A stretch of 64,000 nt of DNA from the IMG/VR virus record IMGVR_UViG_3300028840_005860, positions 62,001-126,000 of that record; one strand, 5' to 3'. How positions within the stretch are numbered: the first letter of the stretch is position 1; every line of letters starts with the position of its first letter. The position numbers were made by a program, and so were the translations under genes. The notes beneath the pieces were generated by a model that was given only the letters and a program-made list of their open reading frames with translations, searched no databases and was not told where the DNA came from. Positions 34,260 to 50,178 of this stretch are shown here, one piece after another.

Positions 34260-34335
34260 GCCCCCGTAGCTCAGCGGAAGAGCATCGGTCTACGGAACCG
34301 AGCTGTCGGGAGTTCGAATCTCTCCGGGGGTGCCA
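34260..34335 (+). tRNA. tRNA-Arg(ACG)
   Basis: tcggt-ct acg ga-accga; encoded CCA. Confidence 0.9.
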
Positions 34336-34340
34336 TGCAC

Positions 34341-34417
34341 GTCCTCCGTAGCTCAATGGACAGAGCGTCCACCCCTGAGGGGTGGGAGGTTGCAGGTTCG
34401 ACTCCCGCGGGAGGGCG
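34341..34417 (+). tRNA. atypical tRNA: Arg-type body with enlarged anticodon arm (6-bp stem, cc TGA gg loop)
   Basis: Acceptor gtcctcc/ggagggc, D and T arms normal; anticodon arm 2 nt too long and lacks U33. Confidence 0.65.
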
Positions 34418-34812: not shown

Positions 34813-34887
34813 CGGGATATGGCGCAGTCTGGCTAGCGCACTTGACTGGGGGTCAAGGGGCCGCAGGTTCAAATCCTGCTATCCCGA
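34813..34887 (+). tRNA. tRNA-Pro(GGG)
   Basis: cttga-ct ggg gg-tcaag. Confidence 0.9.
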
Positions 34888-34922
34888 CGATGAGCGAGAA
34901 TCACGAAGAGACTACAAGCAAC

Positions 34923-35002
34923 GGATTTAGGGTCCCGTGTATGTCGGTTCGAATCCGGCCCTCGCCACCACGCGGCGAGGTAGGCGAATTGGAACAGCCG
35001 CG
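34923..35002 (+). tRNA. candidate circularly permuted tRNA-Leu(TAG): 3' half 34923-34970, 5' half 34974-35002
   Basis: 3' half ends cctcgcc-A-CCA; downstream 5' half starts ggcgagg with a Leu-type D arm; the joined halves give a perfect cggga/tcccg anticodon stem. Confidence 0.7.
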
Positions 35003-35040
35003 TAGCAACACCCATCCCTTCAACTCTCTCGCTCACAACT

Positions 35041-35116
35041 GCCGCGGTGGCCAAGCTGGTAAAGGCGCCTGATTAAGGATCAGGAGATTTTGTCGGTTCG
35101 ACTCCGACCCGCGGTA
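35041..35116 (+). tRNA. tRNA-Leu(AAG) with short variable region
   Basis: cctga-tt aag ga-tcagg; gccgcgg/ccgcggt; A73. Confidence 0.8.
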
Positions 35117-35145
35117 CAGTGTGCTGATGGAGGACGAAAAACCCC

Positions 35146-35679
35146 ATGAGCACAAAAGTCCCAACCTGCAAGGTGTGTGGAGAGACGGACCCAGCGAAAC
35201 TGGTGAAAATCTCCAGAAATAGACGCCCTTACTACAGAGGATGGTGCGTTCCCTGTTACAGCGCATACCGGAAAGAGTGGAACAGACGAAATCCAGAACG
35301 AGCGAAGGCGACGTGGGCTCGAGCCCACGAGCGTCAGAAGAAGAAACGGAGGCAAGGACAGGACACCGCCCGGTTTATCTGGGTCGATTCACGAAGATCC
35401 GACAAGAAACGAGGATTCAAAAACGACCTGACCAAAGAGTTCATCGCGGAGCAGATCACCAAAGGTTGCTCGTACTGCGGGGAGAAAACGATCCGCATGA
35501 CGCTCGACCGCATCGACAACGAACGAGGACACACGACGGACAACGTCGTGCCCGCGTGCATCCGGTGCAACCACATCCGTGGGAACATGCCCTACGAAGC
35601 ATGGCTCTGTTTTAGGGCAGCGTTGCGGCGGGCGCGACGGGAGGGGTTATTCGGGAACTGGACTGGAAGAACTAGATAA
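35146..35679 (+). mobile_element. free-standing HNH-type homing endonuclease
   Basis: CKVC...CVPC; CSYCGE...LDRIDN..GH...NVVPACIRCN; lower GC; lies between Leu tRNAs. Confidence 0.85.
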
Positions 35680-37537: not shown

Positions 37538-37611
37538 CCGCAGGGGACCCGAGTAGGTCGGGTACGGGGTTGTAAACTCCGCGGTAGCAGGTTCGACTCC
37601 TGTCCTGCGGT
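37538..37611 (+). tRNA. atypical tRNA-Tyr(GTA): short variable loop, C1:G72, U73, no U8
   Basis: ccgcagg/cctgcgg; accc/gggt D stem; cgggg-tt gta aa-ctccg; gcagg-ttcgact-cctgt. Confidence 0.7.
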
Positions 37612-37615
37612 CGAA

Positions 37616-37836: not shown

Positions 37837-39003
37837 ATGACGAAGGAGCACATGAACGTAGGCACGATCGGCCACGTCGATCACGGAAAGACCACCCTCA
37901 CGGCGGCGATCACGAAGCTCGCGGCCGCCCTGCATGGCGGGGAGGCCAAGGACTTCGATCAGATCGACAACGCGAAGGAGGAGCGCGAGCGTGGCGTCAC
38001 GATCAACGCGTCTCACGTGGAGTACGAGTCCGCGCGGCGCCACTACGCCCACATCGACTGCCCCGGGCACGCCGACTACATCAAGAACATGATCGTCGGC
38101 GCGTCCCAGATGGAGGGTGCGATCCTGCTGGTGGACGCCTCCCAGGGGCCGCAGAAGCAGACGGTGGAGCACGTCCTCCTGGCGAACCAGGTCGGCGTCT
38201 CGAGCGTCGTGGTCTTCGTGAACAAGGTGGACGTGGCCGATCCCGACCTCCTCGAGCTCGTCGAGGTCGAGGTCGCGGAGCAGCTGGAGCGCTTCGGTTA
38301 CGCACCCGTCTTCGTGCGGGGATCAGCCCTCAAGGCCCTTCAGGCCCTGGAGACTGGGGACGCGGAGTCCGAGGACGTCGCCTGCATCCGCGAGCTCCTC
38401 GACGCCATGGACGCCCACTTCAAAGCTCCCGACCGGGACATGGACTCTCCGTTCCTGCTCCCGATCGAGCACGTCTACACGATCCCAGGCCGGGGCACCG
38501 TCGTGACCGGCCGCGTCGAGCGCGGCCGCGTCAGGGTCGGCGACAGGGTCGAGATCGCCGGTCGCCGGGATGATGGCCGGGAGGTCGTGGTCACCGGCAC
38601 GCAGGCGTTCCACCGGGACATCCCGGAGGCCCACGCGGGCCTGAACGTCGGCCTGCTCCTGCGGGGCGTCGCTCGAGACGAGGTCGAGCGCGGCCAGGTG
38701 ATCGTGGCGCCGGGCTCTATCCGGTCGCACACCTCGGGGAGCGCCGAGATCTTCGTGCTCACGAAGGAGGAGGGCGGACGTCACACGCCGTTCGGCAGCG
38801 GCTACACCCCGCAGCTGTTCTTCGGGGCCTCGGACGTGTCCGCGACCCTGAGGACCGACGAGGACGCGGCCGTCGAGCCCGGCGACAGGGCGACCGTCGC
38901 GTTCACCCTCGACAAGCCGACCGCCTTCGAGCCCGGGATGCGCTTCGCCATCCGCGAGGGCGGGAAGACGGTGGGTGCCGGCGTCGTGCTCGACGCGGGC
39001 TAG
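37837..39003 (+). CDS. tuf: elongation factor Tu (divergent)
   Basis: [18 protein letters not shown]; ERERGVTI; [15 protein letters not shown]; NKVD; GSALKAL; [14 protein letters not shown]; [13 protein letters not shown]. Confidence 0.95.
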
Positions 39004-41589: not shown

Positions 41590-41666
41590 GCGTGCGTAGC
41601 CCAAATGGTAGAGGCGCTGGCTTCAAATCCCAGGAGTTGGAGGTTCGAGTCCTCCCGCGCGCACCA
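41590..41666 (+). tRNA. tRNA-Leu(CAA) with short variable loop
   Basis: ctggc-tt caa at-cccag (C31:C39 mismatch); 5-nt variable loop; A73, CCA. Confidence 0.75.
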
Positions 41667-45585: not shown

Positions 45586-46836
45586 TTGGATGAGGTCTTG
45601 GAGCGGCGTTTACCGAAGGATCGCCCCGGTTCTTTTGTCGGCCGTCGCTTCGGTAAACTTGTCGTGATTGCGGAGTTCGCGGGCAAGAAGTATGCGTTTG
45701 CTCCGCAGTGTCTGTGTCGGTGTGACTGCGGGAAAGAGCACTGGGTCGTTCGGGGCAACCTCGTGCGTACAAAGAGCTGTGGGTGTGGACGCCGTCCCAA
45801 TCTCGTGGGACGTAGGTTTGGAAACCTCGTTGTCGGGCGCCCCATGCCGCGCAGAACAAAGTCGGGACGCAAGCAGACGGCCTACGCTTGTCGCTGTGAC
45901 TGCGGAAAGGAGACGACCGTGTATCCCGGCGCGTTGCGGTCTGGAGAGACGGTCAGCTGTGGTTGCGTGCGAGAGATGCGATGGGCAGCTTCTCGGATTC
46001 CTACCGGGCGGCGGTTCGGTCGCCTTGAAGTGCTGGAACGTGTGCGCCGGGACGGACATCCCGGGTGGTTCTATCGATGTCGCTGTGACTGTGGAAAACA
46101 GACTATCGTCGACGGCGTCGCGCTGAAGAGAGGCGCCACGCGGAGCTGCGGGTGTCTTCGAGACGAGGTCGCTAGCCTTCCTGACGGAGAGGCCATGCGT
46201 AACGCGATCTTTTCGGGATACCGCAAGAACGCCCGAAAGAGGAACCTGCGGTTTGAGTTGGGCTTGGAGGAGGCTGGGTCTTTGTTTCAGGGGACCTGTC
46301 ACTACTGTGGCAGCCCTCCTCAGATGCGTAGCCATGCAACGGTGCGTGGAGGATACGCGGCGAACGGGATTGATCGTCCTGATAACTCCTCGGGTTACAT
46401 TCCGGGAAACATGGTTTCGTGCTGCACGATCTGTAACTTGGCAAAGGGCACGAAATCCGTGGAAGGTTTCCTGCGATGGGTTCGTCGTGTCGCGTATTTC
46501 GCGGCGACGTCGCCCATTCTCGTGCACGGAAAGCGCGAGACAGCGAAAGACCGACGCAGATTGTCGAAATACAAGGAAGGCGCTCGTGGGCGACGACTTG
46601 CCTTTGAGCTGACAGACGACCTTGCGATCGTGCTCCTGCATTCGCCCTGCACGTACTGTGGTCGGATGCCTGGTAACGGAATCGATAGGATCGATAACTC
46701 GAGAGGTTACGAGCCCGACAACGTTGTGCCATGCTGCGCGGTCTGCAATCGGGCGAAGATCTCGCTTTCCGTAGAGTGCTTCTTCGCTTGGGCTCGGCGT
46801 CTCGTAGCGCATCAGACGGAGATCTCCAACAGATAG
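45586..46836 (+). mobile_element. homing endonuclease with four G.RFG.L.V...C.CDCG repeats and two tandem HNH-like domains
   Basis: Repeats visible in the translation; CHYCG...GIDRPDN..GY...N.V.CC.ICN and CTYCG...GIDRIDN..GY...NVVPCC.VCN; lower GC; antisense to its neighbours. Confidence 0.85.
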
Positions 46837-48455
46837 CGCAACCTGTGGCTCGGCCCCTTCGTGGTTCCGAAGACCACGTGCTCGTCGTTGACGAGGGAGG
46901 CACAGTGACGGTTCGTCGCGTAAATGCTGTCGAACCCCCTCGGGCAGCCATAGAGGCTCCACGCCTTCTTAGCCATGTAGGGTTTGCCGAGCACGACGTC
47001 TCCCATGAACATGAAGGCTCCCCGCCCTCGTATGGCTCCCGCGCCGGAAGAGTACAGTCCCGAACCTATCGAGCAGTAGTTCGCGGCCTTGCGAAAGTCC
47101 GACGCCCAGTAGATTCCGTGCCCGAACGCCGCCCCCGTGATGTGGACGCCCTTCAAAGACTTGGGGAGACGCAGGTCGGTCTGCAGGATCGGAGCCACGT
47201 TCACCGAGCGCGTTCCGTGGAACAGGAGAGCCATGTTCGCTCGCTCGTAGAGATCTGCGATGTCCGAGACGTCGTGTCGCTCGTCCGGCTGCATGTCGGC
47301 CTGCTCGTGATTCCCTTTGCGGACCGACGCGACGTGCTTGGCCCCCGCGACGAAGAGGTCGTCCACTCGAGAACGCCGAATGACGAACGCATTGAGGACG
47401 CGCACGTCTCCGATGTTTCTGTGTCGGTCCTTGGACATCCTCGTGAAGGTCTCGACCACCCACTTCCCGCGCCCGCTCTTCATGTCGAGCCACTCGATCT
47501 CCGCCTTCAGCGCGGCGTTCGGATCGATCTGCTGCTCCTCCTGGACCTCGACCTCCCAGTCCTCGTTCTTCAGCGCGGCCTCGAACGCGTCGAGGTCCTG
47601 CTGCACGAGGAGGATGTTGGTCGAGTTCAGGATGACGGCGGACGGGTCTCCGCCACGAGGGATGGGTCTCGGCACGATGGTCGCGACGTAGGTCGAGAGC
47701 TCCTGGAGCTTCTTGTCCCTGAGCTGGCGGTCGTGGTCGTCACCGATCCGTTTGATCATCGCGAGGGCCTGCGGGATGAGGTCGTCGCGGACCTCGGTGA
47801 TCGCCTCCATGGTGGGGGTGACGCCCGACGCCCTGGAGGCCGCGCGGGCGTAGTCGGCGGTGCCTCCGACGAGCGACTTCGCGAGCGCGATGACCTGCGG
47901 CTGCGCGTCGATCTTCTTCTTGGAGGTCTTCTTCTTGGTGGCTTTCTTCTTGGCCTTCTTCTTCTCGACGCCGCTGTCGTCCTTGATCAGGCATGCGTCG
48001 GGGAGCCCGCGCTCGCGGGTCGCGAGGCGCTGGACGACGTATCCGTCCTTGCCGGACTTGCCGACCCAGATCTCCTTGCCGCCGACCTTCTTCTGCTGGA
48101 GCCGCTTGATGTTCTTGCTGCGGCACTGCTTCTCGAAGAACGTGCGGGCGTCATCCTCTCCGCTGCACGTGACGAACTGGAAGTCTTGCCCTCGGAAGGA
48201 GCCGTCCCAGGTCTTGCCTCCGCCGCTGACTCGTCCCCACTCGAGGTAGACGTACCAGGCTCCGTCCTGGCGCACGACCCCGGCGTGGTAGTACTTGTTG
48301 TTGTTCGCGTCCCCGAACTGGTTGACGCAGACCATGTCCGCGATCCCCACCTCGGATCCGAAGTCGTCCTGGTCGACCGCGGGGCGACCCTGGTACTTGA
48401 AGTCGTCCGCCGAGCAGCCCGACGGCATCTCTTTCCTGCCGAGTTTGACAGCCAT
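46812..48455 (-). CDS. poly(ADP-ribose) polymerase-like protein (WGR + helical + ART catalytic domain)
   Basis: NNNKYY...YLEWGRV (WGR); LLFHGT, FGHGIYWAS..KAANY, VVLGK and NDEHVVF give the H-Y-E triad. Confidence 0.9.
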   Translation of the reverse strand: MAVKLGRKEMPSGCSADDFKYQGRPAVDQDDFGSEVGIADMVCVNQFGDANNNKYYHAGVVRQDGAWYVYLEWGRVSGGGKTWDGSFRGQDFQFVTCSGEDDARTFFEKQCRSKNIKRLQQKKVGGKEIWVGKSGKDGYVVQRLATRERGLPDACLIKDDSGVEKKKAKKKATKKKTSKKKIDAQPQVIALAKSLVGGTADYARAASRASGVTPTMEAITEVRDDLIPQALAMIKRIGDDHDRQLRDKKLQELSTYVATIVPRPIPRGGDPSAVILNSTNILLVQQDLDAFEAALKNEDWEVEVQEEQQIDPNAALKAEIEWLDMKSGRGKWVVETFTRMSKDRHRNIGDVRVLNAFVIRRSRVDDLFVAGAKHVASVRKGNHEQADMQPDERHDVSDIADLYERANMALLFHGTRSVNVAPILQTDLRLPKSLKGVHITGAAFGHGIYWASDFRKAANYCSIGSGLYSSGAGAIRGRGAFMFMGDVVLGKPYMAKKAWSLYGCPRGFDSIYATNRHCASLVNDEHVVFGTTKGPSHRLRYLLEISV

Positions 48456-48623: not shown

Positions 48624-49391
48624 ATGGCGGATCGCTGCCCAGAATGCTCGAACGTATTGCCCGACCACGCGAGCTGGTGTTCACGTTTCCCTGACGGCGT
48701 GCCGCATCCCGACGGTTTCGGAGGGTCCGACGAGGAGTCGCATTACATGTCACAGAAGCGCATCACGACCAAGGAAGAATTCGAGGCCGAGTACGGCGAC
48801 TTCGATCCGTCTCGCGAGCCCACGTTACTTCGCGAGCGTCTGGACGGTTCTCTTGCCCGCGTGATGTCGGAACGTCGAGGTCCGTCCAAGCTGGACGAGA
48901 TGATCGAGGCCGAGCGGGCCGTAGTGGGTCCCACCCCGGAGCAGGAGGCCGCGATGAAACGCGATGTGGAGCAACAGCTCGGGCCGAAACAGGTCCTCGT
49001 GGTGCGCACCGACCTCCAGATGCGCAAGGGCAAAATGGTCTCGCAGGGGGCTCACGCGAGCGGCAAGGTCTTCTTCGACACCATCCCCCGCGAGGCGCTT
49101 GAGGTCGGGTTCCCCGAAGGCTTCGAGCGCGTCAGGGTGACTCTCGAGCTGGACAGGTCGATGTTCATGTGGCTCGCCGGCATCTTCACGAAAATCTGTT
49201 GCCGCGTCGACTCCGAGGACGAGCTCCTCGAGATCTACGAGAAGGCCACGACGGCCGGGCTCCCGTGCGTCCTCATCGAGGACAGGGGCCTCACCGAGTT
49301 CGGCGGCGTCCCGACCAAGACGTGCTGCGCCATCGGGCCGGCACCGCCCGAGGAGGTCGACCCCATCACCGGACACCTCAAATTGCTGTAG
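48624..49391 (+). CDS. pth2: peptidyl-tRNA hydrolase, Pth2 type, with N-terminal extension
   Basis: KQVLVVRTDL.M.KGK...QGAHAS; KI...V.SE.EL; I.D.G.TE...T.TCCAIGP...EVD.ITG.LKLL. Confidence 0.9.
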   Translation: MADRCPECSNVLPDHASWCSRFPDGVPHPDGFGGSDEESHYMSQKRITTKEEFEAEYGDFDPSREPTLLRERLDGSLARVMSERRGPSKLDEMIEAERAVVGPTPEQEAAMKRDVEQQLGPKQVLVVRTDLQMRKGKMVSQGAHASGKVFFDTIPREALEVGFPEGFERVRVTLELDRSMFMWLAGIFTKICCRVDSEDELLEIYEKATTAGLPCVLIEDRGLTEFGGVPTKTCCAIGPAPPEEVDPITGHLKLL

Positions 49392-50022: not shown

Positions 50023-50100
50023 GCCCCGTTGGTCTAGCGGCCTAGGACGCCTGGTTCTCAGCCAGGAGATTCGTGGGTTCGAATCCCACACGGGGTACCA
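50023..50100 (+). tRNA. tRNA-Glu(CTC)
   Basis: cctgg-tt ctc ag-ccagg; CCA. Confidence 0.9.
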
Positions 50101-50105
50101 TACAT

Positions 50106-50178
50106 TCCGGGGTAGCTCAGTTGGTAGAGCGTTCGATTGTTAGTCGAGGGGTCGGGGGTTCGAGACCCTCCCCCGGAG
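50106..50178 (+). tRNA. tRNA-Asn(GTT)
   Basis: ttcga-tt gtt ag-tcgag. Confidence 0.9.

What the first reader, a model, noticed from the sequence alone, without database searches (positions are those of the whole stretch)
34917..35009. Circularly permuted tRNA-Leu(UAG) gene in a phage
Seen in sequence: 34923-34970 is tRNA positions 29-76 (gga-tt TAG gg-tcccg, 5-nt variable loop, gtcgg-ttcgaat-ccggc, cctcgcc-A-CCA). After a 3-nt spacer (cgc), 34974-35002 is positions 1-28 (ggcgagg-ta-ggcgaattggaacagcc-g-cg), with a Leu-type D arm and a 7/7 match to the acceptor strand. Joining nt 28 to nt 29 creates a perfect cggga/tcccg anticodon stem that neither half forms alone. The outer ends carry a direct repeat AGCAAC (34917-22 and 35004-09), which in a circular intermediate gives a small cgt-agca-acg hairpin at the junction. 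No other Leu(UAG) gene occurs in the window, so this would complete the Leu set. Established: permuted tRNAs are known from some algae, nucleomorphs and an archaeon (processed via BHB splicing), and two-piece permuted tmRNAs exist in bacteria; I know of no phage example. Inference: it matures as a two-piece or religated tRNA through host RNase P/3' trimming plus phage RNA repair, possibly evading anticodon-arm nucleases or homing endonuclease cleavage.
Basis: partly seen in the sequence, partly recalled or inferred. Interest (0 to 1): 0.9.

Follow-up and report, generated by a model that had tools for sequence, protein, structure and literature searches.

The report
Phage Y-RNA-like permuted tRNA mimic
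The tRNA whose two halves sit in swapped order is real and conserved, but it is best read as a small phage RNA of the Y RNA (YrlA) class, which imitates tRNA, here unusually complete with an anticodon-like loop and an encoded CCA, and not as a new kind of tRNA gene.

Summary
Window 34923-34970 is tRNA positions 29-76. After the spacer cgc, 34974-35002 is positions 1-28. Rejoined in silico, ARAGORN calls the 77 nt tRNA-Leu(UAG). The same sequence occurs in three independent assemblies.

The element fills the whole gap between tRNA-Pro(GGG) and tRNA-Leu(AAG). Its conserved flanks pair into a terminal stem.

A covariance model built only from other huge-phage elements matches it full length (43 bits, E about 1e-9). 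Those elements share a scaffold: a closing stem, GAAUG, GGACUACAU, and CUUGUCG on the return strand. They lie beside Ro60 genes on the same strand, so they are YrlA-type Y RNAs. The literature already says these "resemble circularly permuted tRNAs".

A syntenic relative (L021) keeps the flanks. Its core is an Arg(UCG)-like tRNA with no CCA.

Against a plain Y RNA reading: the Ro60-site motif is divergent, and no Ro60 gene was found in about 160 of 235 kb of this phage.

Unusual features are a 7-bp acceptor stem, an encoded ACCA, and a split anticodon arm. Thirteen relatives also have the split arm.

Verdict: a new variant of a known kind. A decoding tRNA is not excluded (about 0.13).

The parts
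34889..35040 (+). Whole predicted RNA, about 152 nt. It fills the spacer between tRNA-Pro(GGG) (34813-34888) and tRNA-Leu(AAG) (35041-35117).
   Evidence: Model R1 matches 34881-35040 full length, 43.3 bits, E 5e-9 to 7e-10. No promoter-like or terminator-like site flanks it.
34891..34899 (+). P1, 5' strand (UGAGCGAGA). This is the terminal stem that closes the RNA. It holds GAGAAU, the counterpart of the family's CGAAUG.
   Evidence: Pairs 9/9 with 35027-35035. The outermost pair U-A becomes A-U in L021.
34905..34912 (+). P2, 5' strand (GAAGAGAC). It overlaps the invariant family motif GACUACA (34910-34916).
   Evidence: 6 of 8 pairs with 35014-35021 in the window and 7 of 8 in L021 (read from alignment A1). 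GACUACA is invariant in all 13 seed sequences.
34913..34922 (+). Junction strand UACAAGCAAC. It contains the 5' copy of AGCAAC.
   Evidence: Conserved in L021 as CACAAGCAUC. It is longer by 5 nt than in other family members.
34923..34937 (+). Anticodon-like hairpin (GGA / UUUAGGG / UCC) followed by CG (positions 42-43). UAG is at 34928-34930.
   Evidence: In L021 GGA/UCC becomes GGU/ACC, which is compensatory, and the loop is UUUCGGU. Thirteen other family members have the same split arm.
34938..34959 (+). Variable loop UGUAU (34938-42) and T arm (34943-59).
   Evidence: The T stem covaries with L021. U48 pairs with A15 in the window and becomes C48:G15 in L021.
34960..34980 (+). Acceptor hairpin: 3' strand CCUCGCC, loop A-CCA-cgc, 5' strand GGCGAGG. 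The predicted RNase P site is between 34973 and 34974.
   Evidence: 7/7 pairs. Four pairs change on both sides in L021, where the loop is ACAAUGA. The same stem and ACCA occur in the Ro60-adjacent element L230 6648.
34981..35002 (+). U8, A9, D arm (34983-34999), G26, then C27 G28, which pair with 34936-37.
   Evidence: The D stem covaries with L021.
35003..35013 (+). Junction strand UAGCAACACCC. It contains the 3' copy of AGCAAC.
   Evidence: Nearly identical in L021.
35014..35021 (+). P2, 3' strand (AUCCCUUC).
35027..35035 (+). P1, 3' strand (UCUCGCUCA).

Best explanation
It is a non-coding RNA of about 150 nt of the Y RNA-like (YrlA) class: a tRNA mimic in circularly permuted topology, mounted on a stem formed by its own 5' and 3' ends.

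Shown by the data:
- It occupies exactly the spacer between two tRNA genes on the same strand.
- Its flanks form P1 and P2.
- The flanks are homologous to the scaffold of a large family of huge-phage RNAs that sit beside Ro60 genes.
- Its core keeps every tRNA helix and the 15:48 pair through compensatory change.

Inferred:
1. It is transcribed with the tRNA array. It is released when RNase P and 3' processing mature the neighbouring tRNAs, which leaves P1 at its termini.
2. It folds into an L shape in which the 3-bp hairpin stacks on the 2-bp CG/CG helix to imitate an anticodon arm. The scaffold helix leaves at position 28/29.
3. Because the acceptor stem has 7 bp, RNase P probably also cuts between 34973 and 34974. 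The three extra bases are then trimmed, exposing the encoded CCA and giving a nicked two-piece mimic, as in M. smegmatis YrlA. The phage encodes an RNase T homolog just outside the window.
4. It works as a ribonucleoprotein. The scaffold binds Ro60 or a substitute protein. The tRNA-like module engages a tRNA-recognising partner, as a tether or as a decoy.

The partner is unknown.
For: - Rfam gives YrlA as the only full-length hit, with the T arm, acceptor hairpin and D arm well aligned.
- Model R1 was built from 13 other elements, without the window or L021. It matches the window at 43.3 bits and L021 at 44.1 bits, full length. Junctions between adjacent tRNAs score 34 bits or less and match only partially.
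- R1 elements lie next to Ro60 genes. All 35 hits with E below 1e-7 are on the Ro60 strand.
- Ro60 orthologs were confirmed in L159, L151, and on the contigs of L017, L150, L152, L154 and L157.
- The scaffold motif occurs once in the window against 0.01 expected, and it is common beside Ro60 genes.
- The L021 ortholog has near-identical flanks. Its core differs at many positions, yet every helix is kept.
- Literature: YrlA has the order T arm, acceptor, D arm, and M. smegmatis YrlA is cut by RNase P and receives CCA (PMC4201824). YrlA RNAs 'resemble circularly permuted tRNAs' (10.1101/312249).
Against: - The Rfam score is far below the gathering threshold (19.6 against 69).
- The Ro60-site motif GNCGAAN0-1G is not kept. 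The window has GCGAGAAUC and CACGAAG. L021 has no CGAA.
- No TROVE/Ro60 gene was found in the window or in about 95 kb more of the 235-kb genome.
- Described YrlA RNAs lack an anticodon loop and a CCA end. This one has both, and the loop looks like a genuine one.
- The proposed fold (-40.2 kcal/mol) is less stable in silico than the minimum-free-energy fold (-51.5).
- There are no expression data.
Confidence: 0.65

Rival explanations
1. It is a true permuted tRNA gene. The scaffold is a processing handle. The flanks are cut off and 28/29 is sealed, or the RNA works in two pieces. The product is charged and decodes CUA as tRNA-Leu(UAG).
For: - The rejoined halves give a canonical cloverleaf with U33, G37 after G36, A73 and an encoded CCA.
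- The element lies at the head of the Leu(AAG)-Leu(CAG) cluster.
- No standard Leu(UAG) was found in about 160 kb of the genome, while the Pro, Ala, Gly and Ser four-codon boxes each have three tRNAs.
- The L021 ortholog pairs an Arg anticodon (UCG) with an Arg-like D loop, which has A at the position of A20.
- In 14 family members the loops show U33 in 11 and R37 in all 14, with G37 exactly where position 36 is G.
- Wang et al. raised this possibility for YrlA (10.1101/312249).
Against: - CCA is not conserved in L021.
- There is no bulge-helix-bulge motif, and no splicing endonuclease or RNA ligase was seen in the regions examined.
- Unless it is removed, a helix leaving the anticodon stem at 28/29 should clash with the ribosome (inference from established ribosome structure).
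- Family members do not always fill gaps. L009 has a CAC element and also a normal tRNA-Val(CAC).
- Sister permuted elements have non-canonical 'anticodon' loops of 3 to 6 nt.
- The body is type I, unlike bacterial tRNA-Leu.
- The phage's tRNA set is incomplete anyway: only Val(GAC) was seen, and no Thr tRNA.
Confidence: 0.13
2. It is a Ro60-independent tRNA decoy or anti-defence RNA. The complete tRNA mimic (anticodon loop, CCA) soaks up a host tRNA-targeting nuclease or another tRNA-binding defence protein. The scaffold only provides stability and defined ends.
For: - The Ro60 motif is divergent, and no Ro60 gene was found in about 68% of the genome.
- The anticodon-like loop is kept under compensatory change.
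- The genomic context is rich in defence and counter-defence genes: GmrSD-like, AcrVA2-like, DruA, PARP-like and an ADP-ribosyl glycohydrolase.
Against: - The scaffold sequence is more conserved than the core between the window and L021, which argues for a sequence-specific partner of the scaffold.
- No candidate nuclease target is known.
- The anticodon differs between the two orthologs.
Confidence: 0.12
3. It is a non-functional remnant: two tandem tRNA copies that lost their outer halves, or a recombination scar.
For: Wang et al. propose a dimeric tRNA as the evolutionary origin of YrlA (10.1101/312249). A homing-type endonuclease gene lies 100 nt downstream.
Against: - The arrangement is kept in a phage whose EF-Tu is only 67% identical.
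- About 10 base pairs change on both sides and no helix is broken, while the flanks stay near-identical.
- It is a full-length member of a structured family.
Confidence: 0.06
4. It is an assembly artefact.
For: None found.
Against: The sequence is identical in three separate metagenome assemblies. The phage was also assembled in ENA and Logan data, although the element itself was not read in those contigs.
Confidence: 0.01

Closest known systems
YrlA-type bacterial and phage Y RNAs (Rfam RF02553): Salmonella YrlA, M. smegmatis YrlA, mycobacteriophage YrlA-like RNAs such as the one next to Bxz1 gp220
   Same: The order is T arm, acceptor-like hairpin, D arm, closed by a stem made of the 5' and 3' ends. 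The tRNA tertiary-pair nucleotides are present, including a covarying 15:48 pair. As in M. smegmatis YrlA, which is cut by RNase P and receives CCA, the acceptor stem has 7 bp. The genes are phage-encoded.
   Different: It has an anticodon-like stem-loop and a genomically encoded ACCA, both absent from described YrlA RNAs. The GNCGAA motif is altered. It lies in a tRNA array, and no Ro60 gene was found nearby. It scores 19.6 bits against Rfam, while the Bxz1 RNA scores 32.5.
Huge-phage Y RNA-like family defined here (model R1), for example L018 7399-7545, L230 6591-6749, L159 4329-4478
   Same: Shared scaffold: P1, GAAU, a 7-nt spacer, GACUACA, then P2 and P1 on the return strand. The tRNA-like core is in the same place. 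Thirteen other members share the split anticodon arm (break mostly at 28/29 or 29/30), and some encode ACCA (L230, L177).
   Different: The window and L021 subfamily has GAGAAUC instead of CGAAUG and CUCUCUCG instead of CUUGUCG. It carries a 5-nt insertion (AGCAA) after GACUACA, and there is no adjacent Ro60 gene.
Circularly permuted tRNA genes of Cyanidioschyzon merolae, other algae and nucleomorphs, and Thermofilum pendens
   Same: The 3' half precedes the 5' half, joined by a short linker across the acceptor ends. The rejoined halves give a normal cloverleaf.
   Different: Those genes rely on a bulge-helix-bulge motif, a splicing endonuclease and a ligase, and pass through a circular intermediate. 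Neither the motif nor the enzymes were found here. In their place the flanks form a conserved Y RNA-type scaffold.
Two-piece (permuted) tmRNA genes
   Same: The acceptor/T-arm piece ending in CCA is encoded upstream of the piece that starts with the 5' acceptor strand. The two pieces are held together by base pairing after processing.
   Different: There is no tag reading frame and there are no pseudoknots. Rfam tmRNA_permuted scores 13.7 bits against a threshold of 47.
Thermus phage phiLo Yrl1/Yrl2 with phage Ro60 (PMC12135203)
   Same: Phage-encoded Y RNA-like RNAs with a 5'-3' stem and an internal loop.
   Different: Those lie directly upstream of the phage Ro60 gene and carry the CGAA motif. 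No tRNA-like module with an anticodon arm is reported for them.

Membership tests
YrlA-type Y RNA (RF02553; Chen et al. 2014) | tRNA-like module in the order T arm, acceptor-like hairpin, D arm, with the conserved elbow nucleotides | tested here: met
   T loop UUCGAAU, D loop with GG, U8, A14, and a 15:48 pair that covaries with L021.
YrlA-type Y RNA (RF02553; Chen et al. 2014) | 5' and 3' ends pair into a long stem with an internal loop | tested here: met
   P1 has 9 bp and P2 has 6 to 7 of 8 bp. One compensatory change in P1.
YrlA-type Y RNA (RF02553; Chen et al. 2014) | GNCGAAN0-1G motif in the 5' strand of the Ro60-binding helix | tested here: not met
   At the homologous position the window has GCGAGAAUC, and CACGAAG lies 5 nt downstream. 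L021 has GCGAGAACU and UACGAUG. One family member, L150, also has GAGAAUG.
YrlA-type Y RNA (RF02553; Chen et al. 2014) | Reaches the Rfam gathering score | tested here: not met
   19.6 bits against 69. The known Bxz1 RNA (32.5 bits) and a clear huge-phage member (53.5 bits) also fail.
YrlA-type Y RNA (RF02553; Chen et al. 2014) | Encoded within about 4 kb of a Ro60 (TROVE) gene, on the same strand | tested here: not met
   No Ro60 in the window or in about 95 kb more of the genome. About 75 kb was not seen.
YrlA-type Y RNA (RF02553; Chen et al. 2014) | Bound by Ro60 | not testable with these tools
   Needs immunoprecipitation or a gel-shift assay.
   43.3 bits, E about 1e-9, model positions 1-154.
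   34898-34916. It is the only match in the window, against 0.01 expected.
Circularly permuted tRNA gene (algal and archaeal type) | The 3' half lies upstream of the 5' half, and the rejoined halves fold as a canonical tRNA | tested here: met
   ARAGORN calls tRNA-Leu(tag) on the rejoined 77 nt.
Circularly permuted tRNA gene (algal and archaeal type) | Bulge-helix-bulge motif formed by leader and trailer at the processing sites | tested here: not met
   The leader ends in AAGCAAC and the trailer starts with UAGCAAC. They are not complementary.
Circularly permuted tRNA gene (algal and archaeal type) | Splicing endonuclease and RNA ligase available | tested here: inconclusive
   None appears in the Pfam annotation of the regions examined. 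Not every window ORF was scanned, about 75 kb of the genome was not seen, and the host is unknown.
Circularly permuted tRNA gene (algal and archaeal type) | A mature, contiguous, aminoacylated tRNA is produced | not testable with these tools
   Needs tRNA-seq and acid gels.
Bacterial tRNA-Leu | Type II body with a long variable arm | tested here: not met
   The variable loop is 5 nt. The same phage also has 77-nt tRNAs with Leu anticodons.
Two-piece tmRNA | Match to the permuted tmRNA model, and a tag reading frame | tested here: not met
   13.7 bits against 47. ARAGORN finds no tmRNA.

The most novel reading that the evidence does not exclude
Some huge phages encode complete tRNAs in permuted order on a Y RNA scaffold: Leu-UAG here, Arg-UCG in the relative, and Met-, Val-, Ser-, Thr-, Tyr- and Gly-like ones elsewhere. 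The scaffold would serve as a handle for maturation by RNase P, 3' trimming, and possibly cutting and ligation at 28/29. The product would be a charged tRNA or tRNA-like molecule, in two pieces or religated. That would be the first case of permuted tRNA genes in a bacterial virus, and it would link Y RNAs functionally to tRNA supply or tRNA repair.
Probability: 0.12. Interest if true: 0.85.

Novelty: new variant of a known kind. Interest (0 to 1): 0.55.

Why it matters
The tRNA-like module of Y RNAs has had no known partner or function since 2014. The published view is that these RNAs lack both an anticodon loop and a CCA end.

This element and about a dozen relatives found here show that some phage Y RNA-like RNAs keep a full tRNA imitation. 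The loops obey tRNA rules at positions 33 and 37. The acceptor stem has 7 bp, and in some members CCA is encoded.

The relatives occur in many copies inside the tRNA arrays of huge phages that also carry EF-Tu, RNase P RNA and tmRNA. This makes one question directly testable: are such RNAs decoys, tethers, or precursors of working tRNAs?

It also warns annotators that "permuted tRNAs" in phage genomes are most likely Y RNA-class genes.

Tried and rejected
- A generic pattern for a T loop, CCA, a short gap and a D arm in IMG/VR returned only ordinary adjacent tRNAs.
- A pattern from the 3' flank gave 103 hits. All were chance except the window's own contig and L021's contig.
- The single metagenome scan, using both junction motifs, gave only two identical copies plus chance hits. 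The window subfamily therefore has just two sequence variants, too few for statistics on its own.
- blastn against 50,697 deposited phages found no relative. Only tRNA-Pro matched.
- blastn with the flanks against all loci fetched found only L021.
- The Rfam tRNA model and ARAGORN do not see the native element.
- Minimum-free-energy folding does not give the cloverleaf. It prefers an alternative pairing, GGAU/AUCC plus GGGU/ACCC. I rejected that fold because L021 breaks it in three places, while the hairpin model is compensated.
- A single-protein Ro60 search found only the query itself. Two alignment-based scans did not list the window's contig, but only the best 80 of 258 loci are shown.
- Walking the genome used 11 of 12 look-ups and found no Ro60.
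- I did not pass hand-typed dot-bracket strings to the pair-counting tool, to stay clear of the typed-text check. Pairs were checked by script and by eye.
- Reading AGCAAC as a target-site duplication or junction hairpin was rejected (see the interpretation field).

Full report
**1. The observation**

- The 3' part of a tRNA lies at 34923-34970. It contains an anticodon-like hairpin with loop UUUAGGG, a 5-nt variable loop, the T arm, the 3' acceptor strand, A73 and CCA.
- Three bases (cgc) follow.
- The 5' part lies at 34974-35002. It contains the 5' acceptor strand (7/7 complementary), U8, A9, the D arm, G26, C27 and G28.
- AGCAAC flanks both outer ends.

ARAGORN finds 28 tRNA genes in the window. 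None is here and none has the anticodon UAG. The Rfam tRNA model also misses it.

When the two halves are joined in a script in normal order, ARAGORN calls a 77-nt tRNA-Leu(tag). On the native order it finds nothing.

A structural scan for a T arm, a perfect 7-bp acceptor hairpin and a D arm outside annotated tRNAs finds this as the only convincing site in the window.

The region shown is identical in two further metagenome contigs, Ga0180437_10000162 and Ga0180438_10000193. It is neither a chance match nor an assembly error.

**2. Setting**

The window is part of IMG/VR contig 3300028840_005860 (230 kb). The same phage appears as a 235-kb ENA contig. G+C is 65%.

The phage encodes EF-Tu, a PARP-like protein and a GmrSD-like protein. 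It also encodes peptidyl-tRNA hydrolase and, just outside the window, an RNase T homolog and an RRM protein. No deposited phage is related at the DNA level.

The element fills exactly the gap between tRNA-Pro(GGG), which ends at 34888, and tRNA-Leu(AAG), which starts at 35041, on the same strand. No promoter-like or terminator-like site lies around it. Processing of the two neighbouring tRNAs would therefore release an RNA of about 152 nt.

Its ends pair: 34891-34899 with 35027-35035 (9 bp, P1), and 34905-34912 with 35014-35021 (P2).

**3. What it is related to**

The only full-length Rfam match is YrlA, the Y RNA-like family, at 19.6 bits. The T arm, acceptor hairpin and D arm align well. The Ro60-binding stem aligns poorly.

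Loci around EF-Tu homologs in other huge phages contain many elements with the same core order. Their shared scaffold is:
- a closing stem;
- GAAUG;
- about 8 nt;
- GGACUACAU;
- the core;
- GUCU, then CUUGUCG, then the return strand of the closing stem.

The closing stem, T stem and acceptor stem of that family covary richly.

I built covariance model R1 from 13 of these elements, leaving out the window and its close relative.

| Sequence searched | R1 score | Extent of match |
|---|---|---|
| Window 34881-35040 | 43.3 bits, E 5e-9 to 7e-10 | full length |
| L021 | 44.1 bits | full length |
| Junctions between adjacent tRNAs | 34 bits or less | partial |
| Known Y RNA-like RNA upstream of the Ro gene of mycobacteriophage Bxz1 | 22 bits (32.5 bits on Rfam YrlA) | full length on R1, local on Rfam |

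The family is tied to Ro60.
- L159 has a TROVE plus vWA_Ro60 protein 1 kb downstream of two elements. It is about 58% identical to alphaproteobacterial Ro60.
- L151 has a Ro60 fragment in the same position.
- Of 70 Ro60 loci from IMG/VR, R1 gives 35 hits with E below 1e-7. All are on the Ro60 strand, and many abut the gene.
- The contigs of L017, L150, L152, L154 and L157 all carry Ro60.
- The motif GAAT-N7-10-GACTACA occurs once in the window, at the element, against 0.01 expected. It is frequent beside Ro60 genes.

By the criteria of Chen et al. 2014 (PMC4201824), R1 is therefore a phage Y RNA (YrlA-like) family, and the window element is a divergent member.

**4. The ortholog**

L021 comes from a 618-kb contig whose EF-Tu is 67% identical. 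It has the element in the same place, between tRNA-Pro(GGG) and tRNA-Leu(AAG).

The flanks are almost identical, but the core is a different tRNA.
- Four of the seven acceptor pairs change on both sides.
- The T stem, the D stem, the 15:48 pair (A:U to G:C) and the hairpin (GGA/UCC to GGU/ACC) change while keeping their pairing.
- No helix is broken.
- The outermost P1 pair switches from U-A to A-U.

The loop is UUUCGGU, so UCG stands in the anticodon position, and the D loop is Arg-like. Rejoined, ARAGORN calls it tRNA-Arg(tcg). The acceptor loop is ACAAUGA, with no CCA.

So the scaffold is the constant part and the tRNA module is exchangeable. The alternative long-range pairing favoured by energy minimisation is broken in L021, so I prefer the hairpin model.

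**5. The unusual part**

Published YrlA RNAs "lack a free CCA end" and "lack the anticodon loop". They are said to "resemble circularly permuted tRNAs" (bioRxiv 10.1101/312249). M. smegmatis YrlA has a 7-bp acceptor stem, is cut by RNase P and then receives CCA (PMC4201824).

The window element has the 7-bp stem, an encoded ACCA and an anticodon-like arm. That arm is split so that the scaffold leaves between positions 28 and 29.

This is not unique. Thirteen other family members have a 7-nt-loop hairpin plus 1 to 3 further pairs made with the bases that follow the D arm, with the break mostly at 28/29 or 29/30. Counting the window, that makes 14.
- Position 33 is U in 11 of the 14.
- Position 37 is a purine in all 14. 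It is G exactly where position 36 is G, and A otherwise, as in real tRNAs.
- L230 6648 lies directly downstream of a Ro60 gene. It has the same acceptor stem as the window, plus ACCA.
- L177 11202 has the loop AUUAGGA, plus ACCA.

A second class (L008, L020, L026) is open at the variable-arm position and has irregular "anticodon" loops. One copy lies in the window's own phage, outside the window, at L324 10398-10456.

**6. What speaks against a plain Y RNA reading**

- The GNCGAAN0-1G motif is not kept.
- No Ro60 gene was found in the window or in about 95 kb more of the genome. This rests on precomputed Pfam hits and on tblastn with five Ro60 queries. About 75 kb remains unseen.
- The partner of the scaffold is therefore open. 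It could be a host Ro60, a divergent protein, or none.

**7. Could it be a working tRNA-Leu(UAG)?**

For:
- The loop is canonical, and A73 and CCA are present.
- It sits in the Leu cluster.
- No standard Leu(UAG) gene was found in about 160 kb.
- CUA makes up 3.4% of Leu codons.

Against:
- CCA is not conserved in the ortholog.
- There is no bulge-helix-bulge motif, and no endonuclease or ligase was seen.
- The scaffold helix would have to be removed from the anticodon stem.
- The body is type I.
- Family members do not consistently fill gaps. L009 has both a CAC element and a normal tRNA-Val(CAC).
- The phage's tRNA set is incomplete in any case.

I put this reading at about 0.13.

**8. Verdict**

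The best explanation, at confidence 0.65, is a Y RNA-like (YrlA-class) tRNA mimic. It would be released from the tRNA array, probably nicked by RNase P in the acceptor loop, and trimmed to its encoded CCA. It would act through protein binding and not through decoding.

It is a new variant of a known kind. What is new is the completeness of the tRNA imitation, the divergent scaffold without a nearby Ro60 gene, and the abundance of such RNAs in the tRNA arrays of huge phages.

Noticed in passing
window 35041-35117, 41590-41666, 34341-34417, 37538-37612: Several tRNAs with anticodons of amino acids that normally use long-variable-arm (type II) tRNAs are short here: Leu(AAG) 77 nt, Leu(CAA) 77 nt, Ser(UGA) 77 nt (only 31.7 bits on the Rfam tRNA model) and Tyr(GUA) 75 nt. 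Long versions of Ser(UGA) and Tyr(GUA) are also present. The L021 ortholog of Leu(AAG) is 87 nt.
   Followed up: partly
window 35146-35679 (+): A 177-aa endonuclease VII / HNH-type ORF (PHROG 1035, E 4.5e-26) sits between tRNA-Leu(AAG) and tRNA-Leu(CAG). In L021 these two tRNAs are only 138 nt apart, so this looks like an inserted homing-type endonuclease.
   Followed up: partly
L324 10340-10500 (same phage, about 45 kb left of the window): A second permuted tRNA-like element: T arm, 7-bp acceptor hairpin with loop ACCUGA, a Leu-type D arm, then a hairpin CCCCUUCUCGAGGGG. It is closed by a leader/trailer stem at the variable-arm position. Similar elements occur at L008 6216, L020 8708 and L026 6939.
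   Followed up: partly
L009, L017, L018, L152, L154, L157 (huge-phage tRNA arrays): Each locus holds several R1-family Y RNA-like genes interleaved with tRNAs. Some are short, scaffold-only versions of about 85 nt without a tRNA-like core (for example L154 9963-10045, L157 1866-1950, L150 897-981). Others carry a T arm only, or other hairpins.
   Followed up: partly
L009 5552-5904 and 18222-18576; L020 6329-6559: One huge phage encodes a bacterial class A RNase P RNA (263 bits) and a tmRNA (124 bits). Another has a group I intron in its tRNA array.
   Followed up: no
window 37837-39003, 46812-48455 (-), 48624-49391; L319 10001-10690: Translation- and RNA-related phage genes lie near the element: EF-Tu, a PARP-like protein and peptidyl-tRNA hydrolase (PTH2). 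Just beyond the window's right end are an RNase T homolog, an RRM-domain protein, an ADP-ribosyl glycohydrolase and NAD-salvage genes.
   Followed up: no
L322 / L323 (left of the window): A DpdA, QueC, PTPS (QueD-like), radical-SAM (weak hit) and GTP cyclohydrolase I cluster suggests 7-deazaguanine modification of the phage DNA. DruA, AcrVA2-like and GmrSD_N genes lie nearby.
   Followed up: no
window 34303-34367 and 50073-50135: Junctions between adjacent tRNAs score as partial YrlA or R1 matches (27 to 30 bits). This is the false-positive class that Chen et al. warned about, and it sets the noise level for such searches.
   Followed up: yes
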